NCBI RefSeq assembly: GCF_037042905.1
Contig: NC_087248.1
Span: 10,292,001 to 10,356,000 of the forward strand
Length of the DNA: 64,000 nt
DNA from: Lytechinus pictus
Taxonomy: Eukaryota
Direction: 5' to 3'
Shown here: in pieces, positions 1,005-50,650 of the stretch
Layout of the letters: each line of letters starts with the position of its first letter
Position numbering within the stretch: position 1 is the first letter of the stretch
The notes under the pieces: generated by a model
What the model saw: the letters and a program-made list of their open reading frames with translations, nothing else
Database searches by the model: none
Told to the model about the DNA's origin: nothing
Made by a program: the position numbers and the translations under genes

Positions 1005-3027
1005 ATGATGGAGATTTATGCATCATCGCGGCATTTATTCTTGCTTGTTTGCGTCATCGGTAAGTTTTGATTTTGTTTCTCTTCTTTTCTTTCAGTCTTA
1101 GGCAATTGAATTCTATGATCTGTTCAAGTTGTTTCATGCATTCGATTGGGGGCAGCTCCGTCACTATTAGTTGACTATCAACGGGGTCGCACTATAATAG
1201 GCTACTATTGCAGCTCCTTTCAAACTCACCCCATGATTTTCTTTAGGGATAGAAGGGGGAAACGTACGTAGTAAATACAAGAAAAGGTTTTTTTAGCGAA
1301 ATAAGTAGGAAGAATTATGATGTCACCATTATAATTAGGTCTAATAAGCCTTCTAGGCTATCCCCATTCACAGTAAAACAAAATCATATAAAATTGAGTT
1401 GTTTATCAACTGATAAGTTTAGATTCTAAACAAACAAGTTTTAACAATTTTTTCATTAATGATTTTTGTGTGTGCTTAATTGCTGTGTAAAACTGGACTT
1501 ATAAAGAACCATAACAATAAACCAGTTATAGTTTTACATATTATATGAAATGCAATTATTACTTTTCTTTTGGTATATTTCGTTTTCCTACACACATGTA
1601 TGCTTCAATTTCTTCTTCGTTTCTTTCTTTCATTTCCCTTACCTTTCTCCGATCACCAAGCTTACTGTTCTTTCTCTGTTAAGCTTTTTCTGTCTTTTGT
1701 TGTCTTACCTATTCCCACTTTGTATCTTTCTTCCCATCTCTTCTTTCTGTCAACTCATTCAAGCCTTTTCATTCCCACTTCTCCCCCCATGATTTATCCT
1801 TTTCTAAACATCTCTCCCTCTCTTACTCTCTCCCTGTTTTCCTTTCTCTTATCCCATATATTTCATCCCTCTCCTTCATTTCTATGTTTCTATCTCTCTT
1901 GCTCTCTTTCTTTATGCCATTCTTTCAACCGTTAGTCTGTTAAAAGTTGTACTTAGTCTTAAGATGTAGTTATTTCATATTATTATGTAATTGAATGGTG
2001 AAAATAATGTGTAATCAAATTTGTAACATTACAATTGTAAACTTCATGTAATTCAGCCTTTGGGCTGCGATGTGTTGTTTTTGCCAATAAATACCATTTT
2101 ACTACTACTACTACTACTACTACTACAGAACGGAATTTATACAGATATTTTCTATTTTCTATTAGCAGTGTACGTTTATTTTTTTTCATTAAAAGATTAC
2201 AAATATAAGTAAAGCACAGATTGGGGGCATTTGAATACTATGGTGCCTCCCTTATTTCAACTTCATCAATCTCACAGATTAACAAAATTTCTACTACATC
2301 AAATAAGGAATTCTCTAGATTATGTACCCTTCTCCTCCTCCCCCCTCCTTGTAGTCTTCCACATTTGCCGTCACAAATACTCTCATTATCCGATTGGGTG
2401 CTAACTTCCCATTGGCTAGTTATTCTTGTTCTTCTTCTTTTTTTTACTAACAATAAACTTAATTCACATTTTCATCTTTATCTAGGGTCAATGGGGACAA
2501 CCCTGGCAGCACACCGGCCTTTACGCATGGTGGTGAAAGAATTCAGAATTCCGTTAAACCAAAACGCCGCCGACCTAGGCACAGCTGATCAGAGTGTACA
2601 ATCACAGAACGGGGCGTCAGTTGGCAGTTCCACGTCGACCAGTGCAGAAAGCGAAGAGAGTCAACAGCCAAGCGACGCAGCGTCAGCCGCGAATAACGCT
2701 GTCGGAACTCCGGCTGACGCGGCTAATCGTCTTAACCCAATCAAACGGATCATACCGGATCATTATGGGCCTTCTGTTGGTGATCCATACAGGAAATCAG
2801 CCCAGGATAATCACTGGCATTTTAGGAGCTCGACGACATTGGCGGTAGCTGCCCTTGGAGTTGCTCTGGTAGCGCTTATTGCATCACTCGGGGTTGGAGC
2901 CGCCATAATGTCCCAGAAGAACAGACAGGAGGCCGCAACGGGATTCCTCAGGACCGAGGGATACGTCGAAATGCTTGAAATACCAACTTATGATGAACAA
3001 GAGTTATGTCGTAACGTCAATTCATAG
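1005..3027 (+). CDS. Two-exon orphan type I membrane protein (~198 aa): signal peptide, Ser/Ala-rich ectodomain, one TM helix, short cytoplasmic tail
   Basis: Exon 1 1005-1059 (MMEIYASSRHLFLLVCVI-G, donor G|GTAAG) joins in phase 1 to exon 2 2486-3027 (pyrimidine tract + TAG acceptor), giving MMEIYASSRHLFLLVCVIGSMGTTLA-AHRP...; hydrophobic TLAVAALGVALVALIASLGVGAAIM; exon 2 is GC-richer than its flanks. Confidence 0.75.
1550..1935. repeat. Pyrimidine-rich (CT/TTC) low-complexity tract
   Basis: Composition; explains the F/L/S-rich spurious ORFs. Confidence 0.7.
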
Positions 3028-19957: not shown

Positions 19958-20783
19958 CAGTGCGTCCCAGAAAAAACGAAACCGAGATTAAGCGATGATT
20001 TATCATAACTTAATCACAAATACAATAGACAAATGACCTACCAATGTAAAGCTTAGAATCTCCTCTTTCATCTGATATTACTTAGAGTATTCCTTATTCA
20101 CGCATGAGTGAGCAAAACACTTTGAAGAAAGGATGCCAAAAACTCATTTGGCGGGGGGTATCTGAATTTCAAAAAGAAAATCACATGCCTAAAAAGTTCA
20201 ATATCTGCTCTTTTATTTGATACCTTAATCACAAAAAATGGTCAAGAAGTAAAAAAGTTATGTTCCCTCGATACAATGCTTGTATTTCCAAAATTTCATT
20301 AAATAAACGTGTTTTCACCGGTTTCCCACAGAACCTATCGCGAGCTTAACAAAGACTTGATGCATTGCTGATCGTCAACAAAACGGAGTGTCAAGTGAGT
20401 TTGAACGCTAGCCTGTATAGAGCCTCTTCATTTTATGGAATTATTGAATTTCAAGCCTTATTTCAAATAACCAGAACTTTGTTATTTCTCAGTTGACCAT
20501 TTTCGGTAATTGAGGTATCAAATTAAAGAGCAGATATTTAACTTCTTAGAAATGTGGTTTTCTTTTTGAAACCCAGAGATACAGCCCGCCAAATGACTTT
20601 TTGGTATCCCATCTTCAAATTGTTTTTGCTCACTCATGCATGAATGAGAAATAAACTAAGTAATTTTAGATGAAAGAAGAGATTCTAAGCTTTACAATGG
20701 TAGGTCATTTGTCTATTGTATTTGTGATTAAGTTATGATAAATCATCGATAAATCTCGGTTTCGTTTTTTGTGGGACGCACTG
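19958..20783. mobile_element. Tc1/mariner-type foldback MITE inserted in a (TA)n tract
   Basis: TA|CAGTGCGTCCCAGAAAAAACGAAACCGAGATT ... AATCTCGGTTTCGTTTTTTGTGGGACGCACTG|TA; TIRs extend ~270 bp; a solo end recurs at ~42405-42433. Confidence 0.9.
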
Positions 20784-21774: not shown

Positions 21775-23665
21775 TGATCCAGACCGTGTTTTCAATCTTC
21801 ATGTTATAACTAATACAAATTCGCAATGCTAACTCTGTTAATACATTTAAAGTTATGCTTAAAACTCATCTTTTTAAATCTTAAATTGATCATATCATAT
21901 GTTTATTGGCCCATTGATGGTATTTCTTTATTCATGATCTGGCGAGAAAAAGTTGTAAATTGTAATATTAGTTTTGATACACTTTGTTGTGCAAAGTATT
22001 TCTATTTCTATTTCCTCTATACTTCATTTTCCTTTCTTTTAACCGCTTAGAGGCAATTTGCGAATTTGCGGTATATAAAATTGTTATTATCATTATTTAC
22101 CTTACATGATAATAATATGATGCTCGTAACTTTCCGATCTTATCATGCTTATATCGAATTTAGGACTTGCAGTTCGCCCCACCATCACTGTTTTGCTCAA
22201 TACTTTTTATAGTTTGCTTTATTAACGCTTACTATGTATATTTCCAAACTATGTTGCATATTGATCTGAGCTTTGATGATAAGGAATTCAGGATTTTGAT
22301 ATTGTTATTTTACAGTCTATTTCATTTTTCGTATTATAATTATCATTCACGTTATCATTAGTATTGTTTAAACGTATTTTCTTTAGCTTCCAAAATTAAA
22401 TCGATCGGTCAGAAAAGAAGTAGTAGGAGAAGTAGTAGTCTGCTATAATCGACAGATCACCTCTTGTTTTGTATTTCAGAATGTTATTTATCACTATGAG
22501 GTTGTTTGTTTTTATTCACGATAAAAACTACATAAATATAAAACGAAATATGCATTTTATGAACAAAAATAATATGTAACAATACCTCCACAAAGTAATG
22601 AATGTAAACAAATATAGAAAATAAATCGTATATAGAGATACACCGTTAAAGATTGCTTCCCCCTCCCCGAGGTCTCGGGAATTGCTATTACAGTTTCTAT
22701 GACAATAATAAATTAATGTAAAATAAATTAAATAGTTAGGATGTATGAACTTACGATGCAAGGTCAGATATCACCCTCATCTTGCACAGCTCCGGTTATT
22801 TCTATTTCTCTTTTTATAAGTTGAAAAGTAATCTGTTTAGTTTTTGGATGGAAAGGGGTAAATTGTACAATTTTCCAAAACGATATTGAAATGTCCGTTT
22901 ATAGTTTTTAGTGTTAGGTTTAGGCAAGATAGTTTGATTCACTTTCCTTGTAGGGTAACTCAGTGCCTCAAAATATTTTTTCTTCAAATTGGCATGAGAA
23001 ATATAAAATATTTTATAGAATAGACATTACTGTATATGGAAAATTGATGTTGCTAAAAAGTAATTCCTGTCTTAAAATATAAAGAATTTCATGCACTCTT
23101 CTGTGATCTGATACTTTGATTTTGAATATTAAAATTGTCCTTAATGTATGGTTTTGCAGTTTTTGTAAAATGCCAAGACAAGATTCAGTCGCCGATAAAA
23201 GATTCAAACTTAACTTATTAAAAAAAAAACTGATAGTCCACCAAGAAAACTGATTATCTTACAAACTTTTGTGAAAAGGTCTTATCAATTACTATTCCTT
23301 TTTAGATTAAAAACAATAGTAATCCCAACATGACCAGGGTAATTTATAGATTTAACCTGTTCAATATGGATATCCTGAATTTTTAGGTTTAATAAGTAAT
23401 CTTCGAATAAACGGTGTGCATTGCCCTATATTCCGTATAAATGTAATATGTGAAAGAATATTTTGTGACTAAATGTACTGAAAGCGTTGCTTAAGTAAAA
23501 AAGTATTCCAAATTACATGCTCTATGTTAGCCATCGCTTTTGTAATTTTGTCGTAAATATTTACTAACGCTAAGCCTTTGAAATGTTTCTTTCTAAAACC
23601 GTATTGATTTGGAATCAATAAATTACGCAATTTTAAAAAATTGTATAATCTTGTATATATACATG

Positions 23666-23698
<33 letters not shown>

Positions 23699-23828
23699 CA
23701 TTGTCATTGTCAGCTTGTCATTGTTCGAAACCCACCTTCACCCGACAAAGGAAATTATAATTGGTATAGTGTCGAAAATTTGTCTATCTGACGGTCAATC
23801 GGATCGGGGTCGCCCTAGCCACTAACCC

Positions 23829-23900
23829 GTCTCTGTGGTCTAGTGGTTAAGGCACCGGCGTTCAAAGCTGGGGGCCCGGGTTCGATTCCCGGCAGAGACA
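23829..23900 (+). tRNA. tRNA-like gene, anticodon TCA (opal-suppressor-like), copy 1
   Basis: Acceptor GTCTCTG/CAGAGAC+A73; D stem GTCT/AGGC; anticodon stem CCGGC/GCTGG with loop GT-TCA-AA; 4-nt variable loop; T arm CCGGG-TTCGATT-CCCGG; T-run terminator follows. Confidence 0.7.
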
Positions 23901-24233
23901 TTTTTTCGGCATCACCAATTTTTCCAAAGGGTAGATAGCTCTGGGGAACCTTGATTTAAGCTACGCCTACCATTGTTCTCTTCATCCATTTCTTTACAAT
24001 ATTTAAATAAAAAGAGTTGCCAAAGCTGTTGTACATGTATAACTTTACACATTTGTATACGTTCCCCCTACGTGTACTGTATCAAAGCAATAGCTTTGAT
24101 CCAGCTGAAGCATGGCGGCTTGTCATTGTTCGAAACCCACCTTCACCCGACAAAGGAAATTATAATTGGTATAGTGTCGAAAATTTGTCTATCTGACGGT
24201 CAATCGGATCAGGGTCGCCCTAGCCACTAACCC

Positions 24234-24305
24234 GTCTCTGTGGTCTAGTGGTTAAGGCACCGGCGTTCAAAGCTGGGGGCCCGGGTTCGATTCCCGGCAG
24301 AGACA
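24234..24305 (+). tRNA. tRNA-like gene, anticodon TCA, copy 2
   Basis: Identical to copy 1. Confidence 0.7.
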
Positions 24306-24640
24306 TTTTTTCGGCATCACCAATTTTTCCAAAGGGTAGATAGCTCTGGGGAACCTTGATTTATGAGCTACGCCTACCATTGTTCTCTTCATCCATTTCT
24401 TTACAATATTTAAATAAAAAGAGTTGCCAAAGCTGTTGTACATGTATAACTTTACACATTTGTATACGTTCCCCCTACGTGTACTGTATCAAAGCAATAG
24501 CTTTGATCCAGCTGAAGCATGGCGGCTTGTCATTGTTCGAAACCCACCTTCACCCGACAAAGGAAATTATAATTGGTATAGTGTCGAAAATTTGTCTATC
24601 TGACGGTCAATCGGATCGGGGTCGCCCTAGCCACTAACCC

Positions 24641-24712
24641 GTCTCTGTGGTCTAGTGGTTAAGGCACCAGCGTTCAAAGCTGGGGGCCCGGGTTCGATTC
24701 CCGGCAGAGACA
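24641..24712 (+). tRNA. tRNA-like gene, anticodon TCA, copy 3
   Basis: As copy 1 but anticodon stem CCAGC/GCTGG (G-U replaced by A-U). Confidence 0.7.
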
Positions 24713-25045
24713 TTTTTTCGGCATCACCAATTTTTCCAAAGGGTAGATAGCTCTGGGGAACCTTGATTTAAGCTACGCCTACCATTGTTCTCTTCATCCA
24801 TTTCTTTACAATATTTAAATAAAAAGAGTTGCCAAAGCTGTTGTACATTTATAACTTTACACATTTGTATACGTTCCCCCTACGTGTACTGTATCAAAGC
24901 AATAGCTTTGATCCAGCTGAAGCATGGCGGCTTGTCATTGTTCGAAACCCACCTTCACCCGACAAAGGAAATTATAATTGGTATAGTGTCGAAAATTTGT
25001 CTATCTGACGGTCAATCGGATCGGGGTCGCCCTAGCCACTAACCC

Positions 25046-25117
25046 GTCTCTGTGGTCTAGTGGTTAAGGCACCGGCGTTCAAAGCTGGGGGCCCGGGTTC
25101 GATTCCCGGCAGAGACA
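25046..25117 (+). tRNA. tRNA-like gene, anticodon TCA, copy 4
   Basis: Identical to copy 1; T-run one nt longer. Confidence 0.7.
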
Positions 25118-25451
25118 TTTTTTTCGGCATCACCAATTTTTCCAAAGGGTAGATAGCTCTGGGGAACCTTGATTTAAGCTACGCCTACCATTGTTCTCTT
25201 CATCCATTTCTTTACAATATTTAAATAAAAAGAGTTGCCAAAGCTGTTGTACATGTATAACTTTACACATTTGTATACGTTCCCCCTACGTGTACTGTAT
25301 CAAAGCAATAGCTTTGATCCAGCTGAAGCATGGCGGCTTGTCATTGTTCGAAACCCACCTTCACCCGACAAAGGAAATTATAATTGGTATAGTGTCGAAA
25401 ATTTGTCTATCTGACGGTCAATCGGATCGGGGTCGCCCTAGCCACTAACCC

Positions 25452-25523
25452 GTCTCTGTGGTCTAGTGGTTAAGGCACCGGCGTTCAAAGCTGGGGGCCC
25501 GGGTTCGATTCCCGGCAGAGACA
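25452..25523 (+). tRNA. tRNA-like gene, anticodon TCA, copy 5
   Basis: Identical to copy 1. Confidence 0.7.
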
Positions 25524-25601
25524 TTTTTTCGGCATCACCAATTTTTCCAAAGGGTAGATAGCTCTGGGGAACCTTGATTTAAGCTACGCCTACCATTGTT
25601 C

Positions 25602-25808
25602 NNNNNNNNNNNNNNNNNNNNNNNNNNNNNNNNNNNNNNNNNNNNNNNNNNNNNNNNNNNNNNNNNNNNNNNNNNNNNNNNNNNNNNNNNNNNNNNNNNN
25701 NNNNNNNNNNNNNNNNNNNNNNNNNNNNNNNNNNNNNNNNNNNNNNNNNNNNNNNNNNNNNNNNNNNNNNNNNNNNNNNNNNNNNNNNNNNNNNNNNNNN
25801 NNNNNNNN
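25602..25808. other. Assembly gap
   Basis: Run of N. Confidence 1.
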
Positions 25809-25959: not shown

Positions 25960-26198
25960 CACTGATACATCCTTTACGTAAGCGAAACACTACTAAATAC
26001 TTGTAGCCAATTAAGCTGTAAGCTGTTCTTCCAGCGGGCCCTGCATAACATGTTATGATTGACCTTTCTCCATTCTTATGCGTCGAGCGTCCGACAAAAA
26101 TAAAATCATTTTTTTAAAGTCTTTGGTATGACTCGGCCGGTAATTGAACCCAGGACCTCTCGTTCATGAGGCGGGCGCTCTACCACTGAGCCACCAAT
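25960..26198 (-). mobile_element. tRNA-derived SINE
   Basis: Minus strand GGTGGCTCAGTGGTAGAGCG ... GGGTTCAATTACCGGCCGAGTCATACCAAAGACTTTAAAA. Confidence 0.65.
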
Positions 26199-27003
26199 AC
26201 CTTTCTTTATTGTCAAAATGTTAAGCAAGATCATTACTATGTTTATTACACAGTTCGTATAACATTCACCCGGAGAAAAAAAAGCACTTCGCAGCATCCT
26301 GGTGCACATTTCGCACAAGAGTATAGACCCTTAATTAGTTTAGCAATTGCCACAAATCCCATGCAATTCTTATTCTATATGTAGCCAAATTGAATAGATG
26401 TATCGTTATTTTTACTCTTACTGATAAAATATAATTGATTTTTTTAAATATAAAGTATTGAAATAGCTTTGCGCACGATTTCTATCGAAAAATTATTTTA
26501 AAAACAATGAAGTCGAAGCCCAAGGAAATACTTCTGAAACTTAAATTCATACTTGTGCGGGATGTGCAACGCATCACCCATTGGTGAAAGAAGAAAATCC
26601 CCGAAAATGTATTTCAGAAATAGGCCGAACACGTTAAAGATGATTTGATACTGTTAATGTCAAAGATTTTGAAAGAATCGTGCGATCAATGCAAACACAT
26701 TTTCAGTCCCAGAATCAATCATACATCTTGCAGTTAATTGCAAATTAGCGATTGATCGCTGATCTGTTTCATGAAACAATAATTATTAGGAGTGTAAAGT
26801 GATTTTCTACAGTGCAAATTTATCTAGAAGGGCATATCCTATATGAAATTGCCACAGAATTTTGCGATTGATAATGCAAATATTTTCTTGCAACACCTGC
26901 AACTTGCAACACCAGTCACAAGTACCTATTGTGAAACAACCTCAGTTGCATGTGACAGCCACTTATAATTACTCGCTGTGTGTTGTTTCCTCTTTATACG
27001 CAG

Positions 27004-38500: not shown

Positions 38501-41500
38501 TGGGGGGGGGGTTGAGAAAATATGAGAGAATATGTGAAATTGCTGGGTTGATGCCCTTCGCTTTTTCATGAAATATATATATATATATATATATAAAACA
38601 CATAGTATTAGATTTTTTTCCGAATTTAATTTCTCTTATTTTTTTCAGGAGTGACAAATTACCTAAGCTGGATGAAGTACGTCCCTTTCAGCGGGTACCA
38701 TGAACTGGGGAACGCCGTCAAACAACTGGAGAATGGTCTCTTCACCGGAGAATGCGAAGAACATCAAAGAACCTTCGATCCAAGCAGGGATCCCCGTGAT
38801 CTTATCGATGCCTTCCTCCTTGAGATGCACAAGAAAGAAGAGGAGAGGGCGAATAATAACGGAGAGCTTCTGGCTCCGACGGGTTTCAGCCGGGAACAGT
38901 TACTGCATTTCATAGGGGATATTTTTGCAGCGGGGACAGATACGACAGGTACGCCTTGGTTCCTCTCCATGGCCCTGGGAAGCGGGGGTGCTGGGGGTGT
39001 TGCGTGTACTATTCACACCAAGCACCCCCGCTTCCCTGGAGATGGGTTAAGTATGCTTAATAGGATATGTTTAATTAAAATCAGCTTCATTCTTATTGTA
39101 TCGAAACCCTTTTTTTTCTTGTTGAATTTCTCGTGACCAAACTTCATTTTGTAGTGAAAGCTTTTTTTCGATCTTACATCTCCATTATTCGTTTCATGTT
39201 GATAATTATTCGTCATATGGTATGACCTCGTACTATTTACTTTTTCTATTTGTAAATAAGAGCAGGGGATTTAGTATCAGTGGCGGTGTCACACATTTTA
39301 TGTGCACGTGAATATTTTTTAGAACAAACTTTTCTTCTCCTTTGTATTGATCATTGGTTTAATTATTATGTATGGGGGATCTTACTGGTCAATTCCGCCC
39401 AACTAAGCTACTATAGCAATAATTTTATTAGTATATCTAGAAAAAAAAATAAAAAGCCCAAATTTGAAAATTCCCAGACGTAGGATGTAAAATAAGAAAG
39501 TTTGTTTAATTGACAATCTGTAAACTGCACAACATCTTTTGTATGATATCGTATGACACTATTGTAACACATCATTAGATTAATTGTAGCATGGTATTGT
39601 TCTGTTCTATCGCCCATATATTCTGAAACCCTGTCCATCAAAGACAATGTAGGTATAACTCTAAGCTAAAATTAGGCGTATGTGAAGCTACAAATTTCAA
39701 GTTCAGAAATCATGATTGATAAAAGCATCTGATTGGATACATTGAACCTCTACTATTGGTGGAGGGGTCACGATTGGTTATTCATAATTAAACTAAGACT
39801 TTAGGTTATAGGGTTTGAATTAACCCCGAGTTCAGAATACGGGGATTTGGGTATACATTGTATTTAAATGAAAAGTTTACTTGATATCTTTAAAAAATAT
39901 ATGAAGAAAAAACATTTACTTTCGATTTTAATGATAGTTATAGATACATAAGTGCGTATCACATTGTCGTGGAAGCAACTGAAGTAAAATAATTGTAATA
40001 TCATATTTCCCATTAAAAATGATATCTGATTTTGGTGAAAATATAGTTATTTAACCTGATTTGTTTCTGTCTAAACAAATCAACTTGTTGGTATCCTTTA
40101 ACTTAAATTTATTCTAATAATATTGTGAATAATGCATGTTATAATCCTACGTACTAACACCATTCTTTTGTTTGTATATGCAACGCAGCTTCGTCTTTGA
40201 AATGGACTTTCCTTCATCTGATCAAATATGAAGATGAGCAACGTAAGATGCAAGAAGAAATTGATCGTGTTGTAGGACGGGACAGATTACCAACCCTAGA
40301 AGATAGACCAAGTCTACCGTACACCCAGGCATTCTTAACAGAAAGTTTGCGACGCGGAAGCCCTGGACCACTAGGTAACGTTCGTTTCACATATTTTTAT
40401 TCGCTATATTGGTACTAGTATGCCCTAGTAGTAGAAGTGGTAGTAGCAGTATAGTAGAAGTATTAGTAGTAGAAGTGCATAGTAGTAGTAGTAGTAAAAG
40501 TATGGTAGAAATAGTAGTGGTAGAAATAGTAGAAGTAGTAGTAGTAGTAGTAGTGGTAAAAGTATGGTAGAAATAAAACTGGTAGAAATAGTAGAAGTAG
40601 TAGTAGAAGTAATAGTAAAAGTATGGTATAAATAGTAGTAGTAGCAGTAGTAGTAGCAGCAGCAGCAGCTGCTACTTCTAAAAATATTTTTTGTCTATCC
40701 GAAATAATGTGTAAATATGTATAGGCAAATATTGTCCTTATATTGTCCGATCGCATAATGAATGTCAATGACGTGTATCATATTACTGAGGGCATATTCC
40801 CGCAGAAATTGCAAAAATTCTTCAAACATAAAAAACGACAATCCAAGATTTTATTTGAAAAAATATACATGTATACATGATTTTAAATCATGAATATTCA
40901 TGTGTGATTATTTGGTTTTGATAGGGATTGGTTTATCTTTTTAGAACTATAGAGGTCAGAAAGTTTTGCTGTGCGATTTTGATATTAGAGGCAGAGAACA
41001 TGTTTAAAGGACAAGTCCACCCCAACGAAAAGTTGATTTGAAAAAAGGAGAAAAATCCACCAAGCAAAACACTGAAAATTTCATCAGAATCGGATGTAAA
41101 ATAAGAAAGTTATGACATTTTAAAGTTTCGCTTAATTTCACAAAACAGTTATATGCACACTCTGGTCGGTATGCAAATGAGGAGACTGATGACCTCACCC
41201 ACTCACTATTTTTTGTATTTTATTATATGAAATATTCTAATTTTCTCCTCGTCAAGTCAAACAAAGTTTTATTTCTCCCTGAACTGTGGAATTACCATTA
41301 TTTTAACAGTTTATGGTTAAATTAAGTTGGTCCTTATTGTCAAATCTGTAAAAATTGAAATATTGTATTATTCAAACAATAAAAAACAAAAGAAATAGTG
41401 AGTGAGGGACATCATCGATTCTCTCATTTGCATATCGCTGAGTTGTGCATTTAACTGTTTTGTGGAAAAAAACGAAACTTAAAAATGTCATAACTTTCTT

Positions 41501-42647
41501 ATTTTACATCCGATTTCGATGAAATTTGCAGCGTTTTGTTTGTTTGATTTTCTCTATTTATTCAAATCAACAATTTTCTCGGGTGGACTGGACCTTTAAG
41601 TTAAGATATGCTATTCTCAGTGTAAAAAAAGATACTGTTAAATTTATATTAATTAATATCACTCCGCAAAGTTGTCAGATATTGGTTTATTAAATCAACC
41701 TTATCATCAGCATAACGGCTATATTCTGACGAAGACTTAGTGTAGAAAAAGCAGATAAATTAATTTATTTATTCACTGTACACATGTATAAGGAAAATAT
41801 CGACAATCATATGGCCTTAAAATACCGTTAGGAAATAATAAACATAATTTCAGTCATATAATTTGCGTTCTATTAATTTTTAAGTGTTACTTTAATGGAA
41901 AACGTCAACATTTTGTGCGTATTTCAATGTTGAGATGAAATGAAATGGTGATAGCACCTATCCCTAGGGGACGCATAAAGAAATTCTTATCTTTCTATCT
42001 CCTTATGATAGGTGTGCCGCATGGGTCTAAAGAAGATGCGAAATTTCGTGGCTTCGACATCCCCAAAGGGACCGTGGTCATCGCGAACCTTCAAGCTGTG
42101 CTCCATGATCCAAATGTGTTCCCAGAACCACAAAAATTCAACCCATCCCGTTACCTAGACGACCAAGGCCAGCTGAAGACGTCGCTAGTGGAACGGGCAC
42201 GTTCTCAGTTTGGAATAGGTGAAGTACTTGCCTGTTATGTAATAGATCGAAGTTATTCCAATGTATGCTACTTGTTTGTTTTTATTGATATGCTTGATTT
42301 TTTTCTATGTTCCAATCGATTTTCACCCCCCCCCCCTTACCATCAGTATCAAATTCATTGTAAACATATGTATGTTTGATAATTGTGAAACTTATCTCTG
42401 AAAACGGGTTTCCATTTTTGTGGGACGCACTGTATATTGATAAGTTAATACCTTCTCATGTCTTCCAGGGCGTAGACATTGCGTTGGATCGGACATGGCC
42501 ATGATGGAACGGTTTATATTGGTGTCCAACCTTACCCATCGCTTCAACGCCAGGGCGCCACAAGGACCAGACTCGGTAAGCCTTGAGCCAAGGAGCGGAC
42601 TGACCTACATCCCCATGCCATTTGAGATAGAACTTACACAGCGATAG
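35524..42647 (+). CDS. Cytochrome P450, clan 2 (CYP2-like), six coding exons, ~510 aa
   Basis: Exons 35524-35875, 38034-38342, 38649-38948, 40189-40374, 42012-42218 and 42469-42647 sum to 1533 nt with an open frame; TM anchor + PPGP, WKEQR, AGTDT, ESLR, FNPSRY, heme motif FGIGRRHCVG. Confidence 0.93.
36918..37074. mobile_element. Short palindromic MITE (PIF/Harbinger-like) in CYP intron 1
   Basis: GGGGCCCGTTTCATAAAG...TATGGCAACTACTATGG / CCATGGTAGTTGCCATA...CTTTATGAAAAGGGCCCC. Confidence 0.65.
40425..40672. repeat. (TAG)n/(CAG)n microsatellite
   Basis: Direct reading. Confidence 0.85.
41008..41595. mobile_element. Kolobok-type MITE (TTAA TSD) in CYP intron 4
   Basis: TTAA|AGGACAAGTCCACCCC ... 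GGGGTGGACTGGACCT|TTAA. Confidence 0.9.
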
Positions 42648-47666: not shown

Positions 47667-50650
47667 ATGGCGGCAAAGGCTGTGGAAAAACTCAATCGCG
47701 AATTGGACTGTGCTGTTTGCATAAACACCTTAAAGAATCCTAAATCCTTATCTTGTGGACATTCTTTTTGCGAAGAATGCCTGAAACAATGTGGTCAAGT
47801 TCGCCCGGGTGCGATCAAGTGCCCCATGTGCAGAGAAACAATTACCCTTCCAGTGGATGGTGTGTCAGGTCTGAAGTCAGATCCACTGATCAGCAGGGTC
47901 ATCGAAGTTCTAGAGGCTAAGAAGAACTCGACCGAAATAGCCTGCGACGCCTGTGGGGACAGCGATTTGATTCTGACAACGTATTGTAGAGATTGTCTCA
48001 ATTTCATCTGCGACTCATGTGCATCTTCTCATTCAAGAATGAAAATATTAATGAAAGATCACCGCCCAGTACCCCTGGAGAAAATCGTCAACGGTTCGGT
48101 AAAAATCAAATGGATCGAAGAGGGTATGTGGAGAAAGGAAAACGAGTGCGACGAACACATAGGTGAGGTACGGAGATTCTTCTGCAGGACATGTAAGAAA
48201 CGCATCTGCAGAGACTGCATTGTTCTTGACCACACCAGACCTGACCATGACTGCACAACAGTGCAAAATATGTTCCTGGAAACACAGGAGAAAATGAAAG
48301 ATCGTCTGGAGAGTTGTCAAAGAAAGCAAGAATCTGTTCAGGCCATGCTCAGTGACGTGGAGAAAAAGGAAACAGAGATAAACCAGCAGATCCATACCCT
48401 CAGAGAAAATATTCGGGACCTCAAAGCAAAGGCTGTAGTGAATATGAACAGAACTGAAGAGGAGCTCCTTCAGAATGTTGAAGCATTCAAGGGAAAGCTC
48501 AATCTCAAACTGAAAGCTTTCAAGGGCAATTTGAAAACATCTACAGAAATACTGACAAGTTTACAAATAAAAGCTAATGACATCATTTCAGCAAAGCAGG
48601 TGACCGACCTCTCGAGGGGCCCTTTCTTGCCCGAGGATGTTCTTAAAGAACTCGAAGAGGAGATTGCGTCAGAAGTCACTATGACAATTTTTAGGGATCT
48701 CCTGGCTTTAAAAGGTACCCTGGTTCAAGGTCCTAATTTTCCGACACCAGTATCGCCGTTTGCGGTGTTGTTATTGCCGCCCATTTGGCAAGAGAGACGG
48801 ATGTTTCCTATTCCTAATAAAGACATAGTGAAAATCTCATGTGACGGAAATTCTCTATACGTTGCCTGCAAGAATGGTATTTACAAGAAACTGTTGTCTC
48901 GCGAAGCTGAATCGTCAACCTGGATGAAGCTAAACCAAGAAGTCATCAAACAGGTGGTAGATATGGCTATATCAGTGGAAAACAGGACACTATCTGTCCT
49001 TGTTGAGACAATCGCAGGTGATACGAAATTCTTCCGATTGCAGCTGGATGCATTTTCCAAATCCAATCAAGTCTTCCTCAGTGCAAGTTCGTCGATATCA
49101 GTCTCGTCATGTCAACTCAACAATAACGCCCGGATTGCTGTTGGTTTCCAATCTCGTGTGGTCATTACTGACAACAATCCTATGGACGATCAAGTTCATA
49201 GCGAACCAGAAAATCCTGCTCGTTCGCCATTTGGGAAACATGCAAACACGAATTTTGCTTCATTCAACTTCCAGATCCCTAGCATGGACAGGTCGCAATC
49301 TCCCTTTGGCGAAGCTCGGAGTTCACCTAAATTTCGTCAACCAAGTACAACCAAAAGTTCTTCAAATTTTTCATTTAGTCAACCTGGTCATGTTGGTCAA
49401 GGTACTAAGAGTTCATATGTACTCCCTACGTTCGGTCGAGTAAATACAGGTAGGCATATTACATTCTCAGTCATGCACTTGTAAATTTGTACTTGCAAGT
49501 TGTAAATAAAAGAATGAGTTGATTCTTTCATAAAGAATATATTTGTCTAAAATAACAGTTTCATTTGAATCAAAATCTAGAATCAAAATCTCATTTAGAG
49601 AGATGAGATGTAGGCCTGATAGTCTATCATAGTCACGAGCGGTATGTCTTTTGTTTACTAGCCATATCAGGCAAAGTAAATAAACCTTAATTATTTTTTT
49701 TTCATAATTCAAAGGTTGGCCTGATGTTGATGAAAAAACATAAAGCATAAAGTTTGATGGAGTTTCTTCTATAGTTTATGTGACTCATTAAGGAGGAATC
49801 GGAGAAGGGCATATTAATTGTTCCGTAGTTTGTGATTACAAATTGTTGTACCATATTCCAAGCATATTCTGCTTTATTATCCTCACTATTTTATTTCATA
49901 TTTATATTTCATAATTGAAATGAATAGTCAAGTGTTAATAAAATATCCCTTGCAATTTAATAGTTAGCGTAAGCATTTATTAGTCAACACCCCCACCCCC
50001 CCCCCCCCCGTTCCATTATCATAGGGTTCAAGTTATCTCCCACCGATTCAGGAACGAAACACAAAACGGCTTCACAGGAAATAGAGAGCAAAGCAGGTTC
50101 TGGATCATCCATTCTTACGACGTCAATTACTGTCTATCAGGGTCGCTCTAAGAAACAGGTCAAAGGTTTCTCGTTCGGCAGCACTCTACTTCCTTTGGCA
50201 GATCAAGAGTTCGATAATTTCAAGGTGCCTATTGAGAGGGTTAAAAGTCTTGCAGCCACCAAGTCAGGTCAGTTGGTGTTCCTCCGAGGGGATAAGAAAG
50301 CCGTCATCATCACTTATTACAATGGTACAATACAGCAAGAAATCAAGGAACCGGGAAGGATGTACCTGTCCATCTCCTGCACAGAGAGTGACGCCCTCTA
50401 CGTTCTATCCGCCAGCTGGGGCAGCCACACCATTACGCTCACTAAGCATTCCCTGAATGATGGTCGTGTTCTTGAGTACATCATCGACGAGCTCGATGTA
50501 TCAGCAGATTTCAAGTCAGAAGACTGGCCAGTAATTGCTAACCATGGAAATGACCTCGTGGTCATCAATATAGGCAAGGTGATTCGTGTCTTTTCAGCAA
50601 AAGGGGATATAGTAGATGGCGATGACGGATATCCAATCGAGGGTAACTAA
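47667..50650 (+). CDS. TRIM E3 ubiquitin ligase (RING, two B-boxes, coiled coil, degenerate NHL/beta-propeller-like C-terminus), ~802 aa
   Basis: Exon 1 47667-49449 (CAVC...CGHSFCEEC...CPMC; CDAC...C..C..FIC..C...H; C.EH...FFC..C...IC..C....H), donor G|GTAGG; exon 2 50025-50650 in phase 1 stays open into the 50195-50650 ORF. Confidence 0.9.

What the first reader, a model, noticed from the sequence alone, without database searches (positions are those of the whole stretch)
23829..25523. Tandem array of short-arm tRNA genes with a UCA (opal stop-reading) anticodon
Seen: five 72-nt copies fold into a complete cloverleaf (7/4/5/5 bp stems) with U8, A14, G18G19, U33, purine 37, TTCGA and A73, intact A and B boxes and an immediate T-run terminator. 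The centre of the 7-nt anticodon loop is TCA. Known: the normal nuclear UCA tRNA is tRNA-Sec, which has a long variable arm and an extended acceptor/T helix; this one has a 4-nt variable loop and D/T arms resembling tRNA-Glu. SINE heads usually lose the acceptor stem and lack a terminator right after position 73, unlike these. Inference: an amplified opal-suppressor-type tRNA, or a mobile repeat carrying its own UGA-readthrough tRNA or tRNA-shaped processing signal. Caveat: G32 is non-canonical, so it may only be a structural mimic.
Basis: partly seen in the sequence, partly recalled or inferred. Interest (0 to 1): 0.9.

Follow-up and report, generated by a model that had tools for sequence, protein, structure and literature searches.

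The report
tRNA-shaped module of a genome-wide repeat
The five "opal-suppressor tRNA genes" are real, perfectly folded tRNA-like sequences, but they are copies of a young 405-base repeat present about two thousand times in this genome inside (TA)n microsatellites, and I found no sign that they decode UGA.

Summary
There are five 72-nt cloverleaves with anticodon TCA at exactly the stated coordinates. They score 60.9-65.3 bits on Rfam's tRNA model, and each is followed by a T6-7 run.

They are not a private gene array. The 405-bp unit occurs on nearly all chromosomes, with at least 1,815 exact hits to the anticodon-arm/T-arm core. It forms tandem and head-to-head arrays that sit in (TA)n microsatellites.

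- Array structure: the tRNA-sense 3' ends fall at two fixed places in the unit, while the 5' ends are scattered. No target-site duplications are seen.
- Decay of copies: substitutions hit stems and loops equally and mostly break base pairs, so copies decay neutrally.
- Origin of the module: it is a Glu/Gly(UCC)-like chimera. An older, more diverged lineage carries TCC, so UCA looks like one C36>A change inherited by the amplified lineage.
- Not tRNA-Sec: the defining features of tRNA-Sec are absent.
- Expression: two poly-A-type RNA-seq runs show only flat read-through signal on both strands. No CCA-ended retro-copies exist. Small RNAs were not assayed.

Verdict: this is a new variant of the known class of tRNA-derived repeats. 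Suppressor function is unsupported but not excluded. First-stage readers of this scan flagged the same element at about a dozen other places in this genome.

The parts
23654..23698 (.). (TA)n microsatellite that the left (variable, 5') edge of the array abuts
   Evidence: TRF period 2, 22.5 copies; sequence read
23699..23712 (+). 14-nt junction filler (cattgtcattgtca), a stuttered partial copy of the unit sequence that follows it
   Evidence: sequence; the BLAST alignment of the unit starts at 23713, which is unit position 290
23713..25601 (+). Array of the 405-bp repeat unit: one partial unit (unit positions 290-405), four full units and 150 nt of a sixth, cut by the N stretch
   Evidence: 99.1-100% identity between units
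23829..23900 (+). tRNA-like module 1 (anticodon TCA), T6 at 23901-23906
24234..24305 (+). tRNA-like module 2, followed by T6
24641..24712 (+). tRNA-like module 3 (G29>A, 65.3 bits), followed by T6
25046..25117 (+). tRNA-like module 4, followed by T7
25452..25523 (+). tRNA-like module 5, followed by T6
25602..25808 (.). N stretch (gap or masked) that hides the right, 3' end of the array; not filled

Best explanation
The five genes are members of a young, high-copy 405-bp repeat family, not a dedicated tRNA gene cluster. SHOWN: Each unit holds one complete class-I tRNA-like module with an A box, a B box and its own T-run, plus a 333-nt spacer. The family has at least 1,815 modules with an intact anticodon-arm/T-arm core; by my estimate the total is 2,500-3,000, about 1 Mb of DNA. 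The units lie on nearly all chromosomes as tandem arrays and head-to-head pairs embedded in (TA)n microsatellites. The arrays are polar: the end downstream of the tRNA stops at one of two fixed unit positions (about 176-181 or about 223-231), next to (TA)n, while the upstream end is anywhere in the unit. No target-site duplications are seen. Centre junctions of head-to-head pairs differ at every locus and show short overlaps. Individual copies accumulate substitutions without regard to the cloverleaf. INFERRED (about 70%): the module descends from a Glu/Gly(UCC)-type tRNA; the ancestral loop was UUCCAAG, as in this genome's Gly-TCC genes, and one C36>A change in the lineage that later amplified produced UCA. 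INFERRED (about 50%): the family spreads at DNA level by copying between (TA)n tracts. A break in one fragile (TA)n is repaired from another (TA)n locus that already holds the repeat; synthesis enters from the fixed outer ends, aborts at variable points, and the ends are joined by microhomology. INFERRED: the modules look competent for RNA polymerase III transcription; their most likely role, if any, is as a Pol III/TFIIIC-binding part of the repeat, not as a decoder of UGA.
For: Dispersal and copy number: the spacer alone hits over 40 places on more than 20 contigs at 94-100% identity; the pattern GGCACCGGC-N7-GCTGGGGGCCCGGGTT has 1,815 exact hits against 0 for the reversed control; 844 hits carry both flank anchors. 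Architecture: in 67 arms from 40 loci, 61 of the 3' ends fall in unit positions 175-187 or 215-234, while the 5' ends are spread from 1 to 333; all 33 inspected outer ends run into TA-rich microsatellite sequence, 28 abutting (TA)n directly and 5 abutting (CA)n followed by (TA)n; five arms with a unique 5' flank show no duplication; head-to-head pairs have different centre junctions at every locus. Neutral decay: of 72 full modules, 47% are identical to the consensus; there are 52 locus-unique changes, 0.74 per stem position against 0.70 per other position; 24 stem changes break a pair and 7 keep one; diversity across loci is 0.020 for the tRNA against 0.023-0.051 for spacer segments, not a decisive difference. 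Origin: the D arm is 14/14 identical to the genome's Glu genes, and the T arm is identical to both Glu and Gly-TCC genes; the loop plus the first stem bases, TTCCAAGC, of the older copies equals the Gly-TCC genes; at position 36, with 16 exact flanking bases, the variants are C 31, T 10 and G 6, so the transversion to C is three to five times too frequent for random mutation; the TCC copies are dispersed singletons with about 3.5% further changes, against about 1.3% in the TCA copies; no other tRNA in the genome shares the acceptor stem. Not tRNA-Sec: 7/5 acceptor/T helix, 4-nt variable loop, A73; best Rfam family RF00005.
Against: The covariance score of 60.9-65.3 bits (Rfam RF00005, gathering score 29), the perfect stems, the intact A/B boxes and the terminator are those of a working Pol III tRNA gene, so transcription cannot be dismissed. 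All seven acceptor pairs and the anticodon stem differ from Glu and Gly genes yet pair perfectly, which implies past selection for the fold or a chimeric origin. No high-frequency subfamily variant (15% or more) lies inside the tRNA, while 12 lie in the spacer; about 2 would be expected in the tRNA, P about 0.12. This hints that the amplifying lineage keeps the tRNA intact. Some diverged copies carry TCA, so the direction TCC>TCA is likely but not proven. The copying-between-microsatellites mechanism is inferred from anatomy only; no empty sites were examined. A TA-targeting transposon family occupies the same (TA)n tracts, so transposase-mediated insertion is possible.
Confidence: 0.8

Rival explanations
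1. A working opal-suppressor tRNA family. Some copies are transcribed by Pol III, processed, CCA-added and charged. TrpRS is a possible charging enzyme, because the module offers A73, G1-C72 and C35-A36; that link is from my own knowledge of identity elements. The tRNA would then read UGA, giving constitutive or regulated read-through.
For: Full cloverleaf, 60.9-65.3 bits, A and B boxes, and a T-run directly after position 73. About half of the sampled copies are identical to the consensus. TCA is the consensus in contigs from two other species labels as well (runs X10 and X14).
Against: About two thousand copies decay neutrally, and stem changes mostly break pairs. TCA is one step from the TCC of an older lineage. 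G32 is non-canonical; position 32 is almost always a pyrimidine in elongator tRNAs (my own knowledge). The acceptor stem matches no cognate tRNA in the genome. RNA-seq shows flat, two-stranded, low signal with no ends at the tRNA borders. The CCA-ended form has left one genomic hit, which is chance level. Thousands of active suppressor genes would be expected to be harmful in an animal using the standard code (inference).
Confidence: 0.05
2. A non-autonomous cut-and-paste (class II) element, a foldback element or MITE whose long inverted arms contain the tRNA. It would be mobilised by a TA-targeting transposase, with internal deletions arising from interrupted gap repair.
For: Head-to-head arms occur in roughly half of the loci. 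Both outer ends are flanked by TA repeats. A Tc1-like family with CAGTGCG tips sits in (TA)n in just the same way, including in this window. The outer ends are conserved while the centres vary.
Against: The two tips of a pair are not inverted copies of each other: one arm ends about 50 nt further along the unit than the other in 13 of about 16 pairs. The tips show no similarity to the CAGTG type. Many loci are single arms with a random inner end joined to unique DNA. No transposase-bearing copy was seen in 40 loci.
Confidence: 0.22
3. RNA-mediated spread. Long transcripts of arrays ending in a (UA)n tail would be reverse-transcribed at nicked (TA)n targets by a LINE enzyme. This would give a fixed 3' end, 5' truncation, and inverted arms by twin priming on the palindromic target.
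For: Strong polarity, with fixed 3' ends and scattered 5' ends. Microhomology at inversion junctions. The repeat is present in RNA-seq reads on both strands.
Against: No target-site duplications in the five testable arms. A T6 Pol III terminator lies directly after the tRNA, so a SINE-type Pol III transcript could not include the body. Many arms start upstream of the tRNA, which a Pol III start cannot give. The geometry expected of twin priming is met in only about 4 of 14 pairs (my reading). No partner LINE with this tail was found, though none was searched for systematically.
Confidence: 0.1
4. The module has a non-decoding host or element function. It could act as a TFIIIC/Pol III-bound boundary or insulator, or as an RNase P/Z processing signal that cuts longer repeat transcripts. 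The anticodon would be irrelevant.
For: Perfect B box GGTTCGATTCC and Glu-type A box. No subfamily-level variant lies inside the tRNA, in contrast to the spacer. There is a weak Rfam resemblance to mascRNA-type tRNA-like processing elements, 29 bits, below threshold.
Against: No pile-up of read starts or ends at the tRNA borders in RNA-seq. Single copies decay neutrally. The difference in conservation is not significant.
Confidence: 0.15

Closest known systems
tRNA-derived repetitive elements that tRNA finders report as genes (young tRNA-SINE heads; 'possible suppressor' calls), as discussed for tRNAscan-SE 2.0's high-confidence filter (PMC8450103)
   Same: High copy number, retained internal Pol III promoter, tRNA-like score, and an anticodon not used in normal decoding. 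It would fail the filter's rules on expected anticodon and on more than 40 hits per anticodon (rules read).
   Different: SINE heads usually lose the cloverleaf. This module keeps every stem, has its own terminator directly after position 73, lacks target-site duplications, and lives in tandem and head-to-head arrays rather than as single retroposed copies.
SINE-derived satellites (squamate sSats, PMC10702118) and satellite-like arrays carried by mobile elements in bivalves (tandem-repeat-containing MITEs, PMC3879986; Helentron-borne arrays, PMC7492417)
   Same: Short tandem arrays of a unit a few hundred bp long, scattered over many loci instead of forming one heterochromatic block, with microsatellites at the borders.
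   Different: Here the whole tRNA is kept in the unit. No flanking left or right element sequences or Helitron-type ends were seen; arrays abut (TA)n directly. Many loci are head-to-head pairs. For the two bivalve papers I used only titles and abstracts as listed.
Helenus TRIMs: non-autonomous LTR retrotransposons with a tRNA-like sequence in the LTR (PMC10886601)
   Same: [quoted passage not shown] Their 5S-bearing relative Cassandra also forms tandem arrays (title listed).
   Different: No LTR pair with fixed TG..CA ends, no PBS/PPT layout, and no 4-5 bp duplications. Helenus is not reported from echinoderms.
Tandem tRNA gene arrays of Entamoeba (PMC2652664)
   Same: tRNA genes in tandem array units, separated by microsatellite-like short repeats, making up a sizeable genome fraction.
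   Different: Those are the organism's working tRNA genes of all isotypes. Here a single odd isoacceptor-like sequence sits on a dispersed repeat, while the normal Glu and Gly genes lie elsewhere.
tRNA-Sec (the normal UCA tRNA)
   Same: Anticodon UCA only.
   Different: Lacks the long variable arm, the 13-bp acceptor/T helix, the 6-bp D stem and G73. ARAGORN's 'SeC' label rests on the anticodon alone.

Membership tests
tRNA-Sec | UCA anticodon | tested here: met
tRNA-Sec | Long variable arm and 9/4 or 8/5 acceptor/T helix (13 bp), extended D stem, G73 | tested here: not met
   7/5 helix, 4-nt variable loop, 4-bp D stem, A73; best Rfam family of the tRNA clan is RF00005, not the Sec model
Canonical cytosolic elongator tRNA gene | Cloverleaf with conserved tertiary positions, A and B boxes, T-run terminator | tested here: met
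Canonical cytosolic elongator tRNA gene | Anticodon of the normal decoding set, and isotype features consistent with it | tested here: not met
   UCA; the arms are a Glu/Gly mixture; the acceptor stem is shared with no other tRNA in the genome
Canonical cytosolic elongator tRNA gene | Copies kept intact by purifying selection | tested here: not met
   Stem and loop positions mutate equally; 24 of 31 stem changes break pairs
Canonical cytosolic elongator tRNA gene | Mature, CCA-ended, charged RNA | tested here: inconclusive
tRNA-derived SINE | tRNA-related head with internal Pol III promoter | tested here: met
tRNA-derived SINE | Head, body and tail transcribed as one Pol III unit, with no terminator between head and body | tested here: not met
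   T6-7 directly after the discriminator in all five window copies
tRNA-derived SINE | Target-site duplications flanking single dispersed insertions | tested here: not met
   None in five testable arms; arrays and inverted pairs instead of single copies
Foldback / TIR class II element | Inverted arms | tested here: met
   Head-to-head pairs in about half of 40 loci
Foldback / TIR class II element | Matching inverted tips and a fixed-length duplication | tested here: not met
   Tips offset by about 50 nt in 13 of about 16 pairs; a duplication is not readable inside (TA)n and is absent where one flank is unique
Helitron / Helentron-borne array | 5' TC.. and 3' hairpin plus CTRR ends, or Helentron termini, around the array | tested here: not met
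   Ends read ..CTTTACAAT and ..CACATTT with no G+C-rich hairpin (read by eye)
Helenus TRIM | Two LTRs with a tRNA-like part, PBS, PPT and a 4-5 bp duplication | tested here: not met
   No fixed 5' end and no duplications; family definition

The most novel reading that the evidence does not exclude
A fraction of the roughly two thousand Pol III-competent modules is transcribed and matured into a UCA tRNA that is charged. The animal would then carry, and tolerate or regulate, a repeat-borne opal suppressor. That would be a mobile element able to alter stop-codon reading, or a first step toward UGA reassignment in an animal nucleus. A less dramatic novel reading is more likely, at about 0.4-0.5: a Pol III gene-bearing repeat that 'homes' between (TA)n microsatellites by break repair rather than by any transposase.
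Probability: 0.04. Interest if true: 0.85.

Novelty: new variant of a known kind. Interest (0 to 1): 0.33.

Why it matters
For annotation, about two thousand "tRNA-Sec/suppressor" calls in this genome should be masked as one repeat family, not counted as genes.

For repeat biology, the family is an unusually clean case. A complete Pol III gene with its own terminator rides on a repeat that lives only in (TA)n tracts. Its polarity, head-to-head pairs and lack of duplications point to copying between fragile microsatellites. If confirmed, that would show how microsatellites can act as landing pads and donors for sequence spread.

For translation biology, it is a natural test of how a genome tolerates thousands of potential suppressor genes. 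That question only becomes interesting if small-RNA data show expression.

Tried and rejected
- Whole-genome DNA search with the 72-nt tRNA: it found nothing because the tool skips very common words. I replaced it with pattern searches.
- First pattern search: my first pattern had the loop one base too long and found a single insertion variant. I corrected it.
- JGI metagenome scan for the module: 0 hits.
- Search for a founder tRNA: no ordinary tRNA has the same acceptor stem. All 11 hits were variants of the repeat.
- tRNA-Sec reading: rejected on structure.
- LTR/TRIM (Helenus) reading: rejected, because there are no fixed 5' ends and no duplications.
- Helitron reading: rejected on the end sequences.
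- Twin-priming geometry: it fits only about 4 of 14 pairs.
- Stronger conservation of the tRNA than the spacer: the result depends on how loci were sampled. Diversity was 0.011 against 0.024-0.07 in loci chosen by a tRNA pattern, and 0.028 against 0.014-0.022 in loci chosen by spacer similarity. I treat it as not shown.
- RNA evidence: two raw RNA-seq runs give flat coverage on both strands. About 1.3e-4 of reads map, against about 1e-3 of the genome, with no start or end pile-ups. This is uninformative for a 72-nt RNA.
- Second run search with the tRNA alone: it listed only runs of unknown type, and no read-laying run was left.
The TCC lineage is therefore known only from 57-nt and 17-nt pattern matches.
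- Literature searches: I found no description of this family.
- Organism: names are coded. The only clue is that the nearest clusters to a neighbouring TRIM-like ORF are from echinoderms.
Full report
1. THE OBSERVATION

Rfam's general tRNA model matches all five over its full length. Four score 60.9 bits, and the third scores 65.3 bits because its G29>A turns a G-U pair into A-U. The gathering score is 29.

Read against standard numbering, the sequence has these features:
- Stems of 7/4/5/5 bp with only standard pairs.
- U8, A14 and G18G19.
- Anticodon loop G32-U33-U34-C35-A36-A37-A38.
- A 4-nt variable loop.
- T loop TTCGATT and discriminator A.
- T6 (once T7) starting at the next base.

The copies sit in a 405-bp tandem unit at 99% identity over 23713-25601. 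On the left the array abuts a (TA)22 tract. On the right it runs into an N stretch, which I did not try to fill.

2. IT IS A GENOME-WIDE REPEAT

The 333-nt spacer alone finds full-length matches at 94-100% identity on more than 20 contigs. Only 40 of over 1,000 candidates were scored.

A pattern that fixes 25 bases of the anticodon and T arms and leaves the 7-nt loop free has 1,815 exact hits, against 0 for the reversed control. Nearly all read GTTCAAA. Anchoring on the two flanks of the tRNA instead gives 844 hits. Allowing for 1-2% divergence, I estimate 2,500-3,000 modules, about 1 Mb. That figure is my estimate, not a count.

Arrays range from one partial unit to 36 or more units, for example C2:8.866-8.880 Mb. 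First-stage readers of this scan flagged the same element at about a dozen other places in this genome, with no follow-up on record.

3. ANATOMY OF THE LOCI

I fetched 40 loci and mapped the unit onto them. Unit position 1 is the first base of the tRNA.

- 3' ends are fixed. Of 67 arms, 61 end downstream of the tRNA in one of two narrow places: unit positions 175-187 (..CTTTACAAT) or 215-234 (..CACATTT).
- Outer ends meet microsatellites. All 33 outer ends I inspected by eye run into TA-rich microsatellite sequence. Of these, 28 abut (TA)n directly and 5 abut (CA)n followed by (TA)n.
- 5' ends are scattered. Upstream ends are spread over the whole unit, from 1 to 333, and many cut the tRNA itself. 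About two thirds of the single-arm 5' ends inspected by eye touch (TA)n. By the stricter automatic test, 18 of all 67 arms have a 5' end touching (TA)4 or longer.
- No duplications. Five arms whose upstream end joins unique DNA show no target-site duplication.
- Head-to-head pairs. About half of the loci are pairs with the tRNAs pointing outward. The centre junction differs at every locus and often has 1-12 nt of overlap.
- Pairs are asymmetric. In 13 of about 16 pairs, one arm ends at about 231 and the other at about 181.
- The window's array is a single arm. Its variable upstream end lies at unit position 290, next to (TA)n.

4. WHAT THE tRNA MODULE IS

The genome's ordinary genes can be read from pattern hits: about 50 Glu genes (CTC and TTC) and a cluster of about 30 Gly-TCC genes on C13.

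- Positions 8-21 of the module are 14/14 identical to the Glu genes.
- Its T arm is identical to both the Glu and the Gly-TCC genes.
- Over positions 8-65 it is 70-75% identical to each, by my hand count.
- Its acceptor stem is found in no other tRNA of the genome.
- Its anticodon stem is different but fully paired.

It is therefore an intact chimera or derivative of the Glu/Gly(UCC) type, not a decayed pseudogene.

About 25 dispersed copies of the same module carry GTTCCAAGCTGG, that is anticodon TCC. The loop and first stem bases, TTCCAAGC, match the Gly-TCC genes. These copies have about 3.5% further changes, against about 1.3% in flank-anchored TCA copies.

With 16 exact flanking bases, position 36 reads C in 31 copies, T in 10 and G in 6. 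Random mutation from A would favour G, so the excess of C marks a lineage. One TCC copy is preceded by the family's spacer (compare C3:80751560 with C3:80751685).

The simplest reading is that TCC is older and a single C36>A change was inherited by the lineage that amplified. Some diverged copies also carry TCA, so I put this at about 70%.

5. ARE THE COPIES UNDER SELECTION?

Among 72 full modules in 40 loci, 34 equal the consensus. The 52 locus-unique changes fall on stem positions (0.74 per position) and other positions (0.70) alike. Of 31 stem changes, 24 break the pair and 7 keep one.

The anticodon loop varies like the rest. Variants seen are GATCAAA, GTTCATA, GTTCTAA, GTTCAAT and ATTCAAA. 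Diversity between loci is 0.020 in the tRNA and 0.023-0.051 in spacer segments, and the sign of the difference depends on how loci were chosen.

No variant at 15% or more lies in the tRNA while 12 lie in the spacer, against about 2 expected. This is a hint, not a proof, that the amplifying lineage keeps the module intact. Single copies are not maintained.

6. EXPRESSION

Two raw RNA-seq runs of the same species label cover the unit evenly on both strands. About 1.3e-4 of reads map, below the repeat's roughly 1e-3 share of the genome. Most mapped reads are 90-99% alike, which means they come from older copies. There are no pile-ups of starts or ends at the tRNA borders. That is what intronic and read-through transcription gives, and such libraries cannot see a 72-nt tRNA.

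Contigs from runs with two other species labels carry the unit at about 99% identity with TCA (X10 and X14), so the family is shared by close relatives.

The mature 3' end plus CCA, read as a primer-binding site or a retro-copy, occurs once in the genome, which is chance level. Expression as a tRNA is neither shown nor excluded.

7. HOW IT MOST LIKELY SPREADS (INFERENCE)

The evidence against three named mechanisms:
- Polarity, the lack of duplications, microhomology at the junctions and strict residence in (TA)n argue against a SINE. The Pol III terminator after the tRNA and the arms that start upstream of the tRNA also exclude a Pol III retroposon.
- The end sequences argue against a Helitron.
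- The absence of fixed 5' ends argues against an LTR element.

The model that explains most features is DNA-level copying between (TA)n tracts:
(a) Long (TA)n tracts are fragile and self-complementary (established knowledge).
(b) A break in one tract can pair with the (TA)n flanking an existing insert.
(c) Synthesis enters from the fixed outer ends.
(d) If synthesis aborts, the two nascent ends are joined by microhomology.

This gives variable inner ends, new centre junctions, inherited asymmetric outer ends and single arms. I put it at about 50%.

A TA-targeting transposase is the main rival. A Tc1-like family with CAGTGCG tips occupies (TA)n in the same way, including at 19958-20783 of this window, and shares tracts with the tRNA arrays in 6 of 40 loci. 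However, the tips of the tRNA repeat are not inverted copies of one another.

8. COMPARISON WITH WHAT IS KNOWN

tRNA-derived repeats that score as tRNA genes are familiar, and tRNAscan-SE 2 filters them by anticodon, isotype consistency and copy number. The following are also described:
- SINE-derived satellites.
- Arrays carried by MITEs or Helentrons (titles and abstracts).
- tRNA-bearing TRIMs.
- Entamoeba's tRNA arrays.

This family differs from each. It has a complete cloverleaf with its own terminator, (TA)n residence, head-to-head pairs and no duplications. It is not tRNA-Sec. I found no paper describing it, but Repbase-type libraries could not be searched.

9. VERDICT

- The reading as a working opal suppressor is unsupported, at about 5%.
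- Novelty: a new variant of a known kind.
- Interest is moderate to low for translation biology and moderate for repeat biology.

Noticed in passing
window 19958-20783 (solo tip at 42422-42432); also L031:3645-4463, L035:681-2476, L049:299-1283: TA-flanked inverted-repeat element of about 0.8-1.8 kb with Tc1-like tips CAGTGCGTCCC...GGGACGCACTG. It sits inside (TA)n tracts on both sides. In 6 of 40 loci it shares the same (TA)n tract with a tRNA-repeat array.
   Followed up: partly
L015, L017, L018, L019, L025, L028, L035, L039, L040, L047, L049 versus L016, L014: In head-to-head pairs, the arm ending at unit position about 231 lies on the low-coordinate side in 11-12 of 14 loci. Random insertion orientation predicts 50:50. 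The sample is small and I have no explanation.
   Followed up: no
window 26129-26200 (-): Weak tRNA-like sequence (ARAGORN Met/cat, Rfam 33.8 bits) of a different type (GGCTCAGTGGTAGAGC...GGTTCAATT). It is probably the head of another tRNA-derived repeat or a pseudogene.
   Followed up: no
window 23901-24233 (spacer of the unit): The spacer folds somewhat better than shuffles (-84.9 kcal/mol, z = -3.2) and contains short hairpins such as CAAAGCAATAGCTTTG. No Rfam family matches it. Another first-reader note proposes a structured RNA here. I did not test covariation.
   Followed up: partly
window 47667-49484 (+) and 38651-39136 (+): An intact intronless 605-aa RING plus B-box (TRIM-like) ORF ending in TAA, whose nearest Atlas clusters are from echinoderms and molluscs. 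Also a cytochrome P450 exon-like ORF.
   Followed up: partly
RNA runs X23 and X24 laid on window 23713-24117: The two RNA samples of the same species label differ strongly in variant frequencies of the repeat. For example, 23896 A>G is about 50% in one and 6% in the other, and 23913, 23966 and 24050 behave likewise. Different subfamilies or individuals are therefore represented.
   Followed up: no
G000 C1:2838295, 2842517, 2846729: Three identical copies of a strongly diverged module (about 7 changes, TCA kept) spaced 4.2 kb apart. An old copy appears to have been caught in a larger tandem duplication.
   Followed up: no
G000 C16:2592761-2598840 and C17:25857114-25881053; C13:22080297-22158142: The genome's ordinary Glu-TTC, Glu-CTC and Gly-TCC genes are themselves clustered: about 0.4-kb spacing for Glu-TTC, and about 30 Gly-TCC genes within 80 kb.
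   Followed up: no
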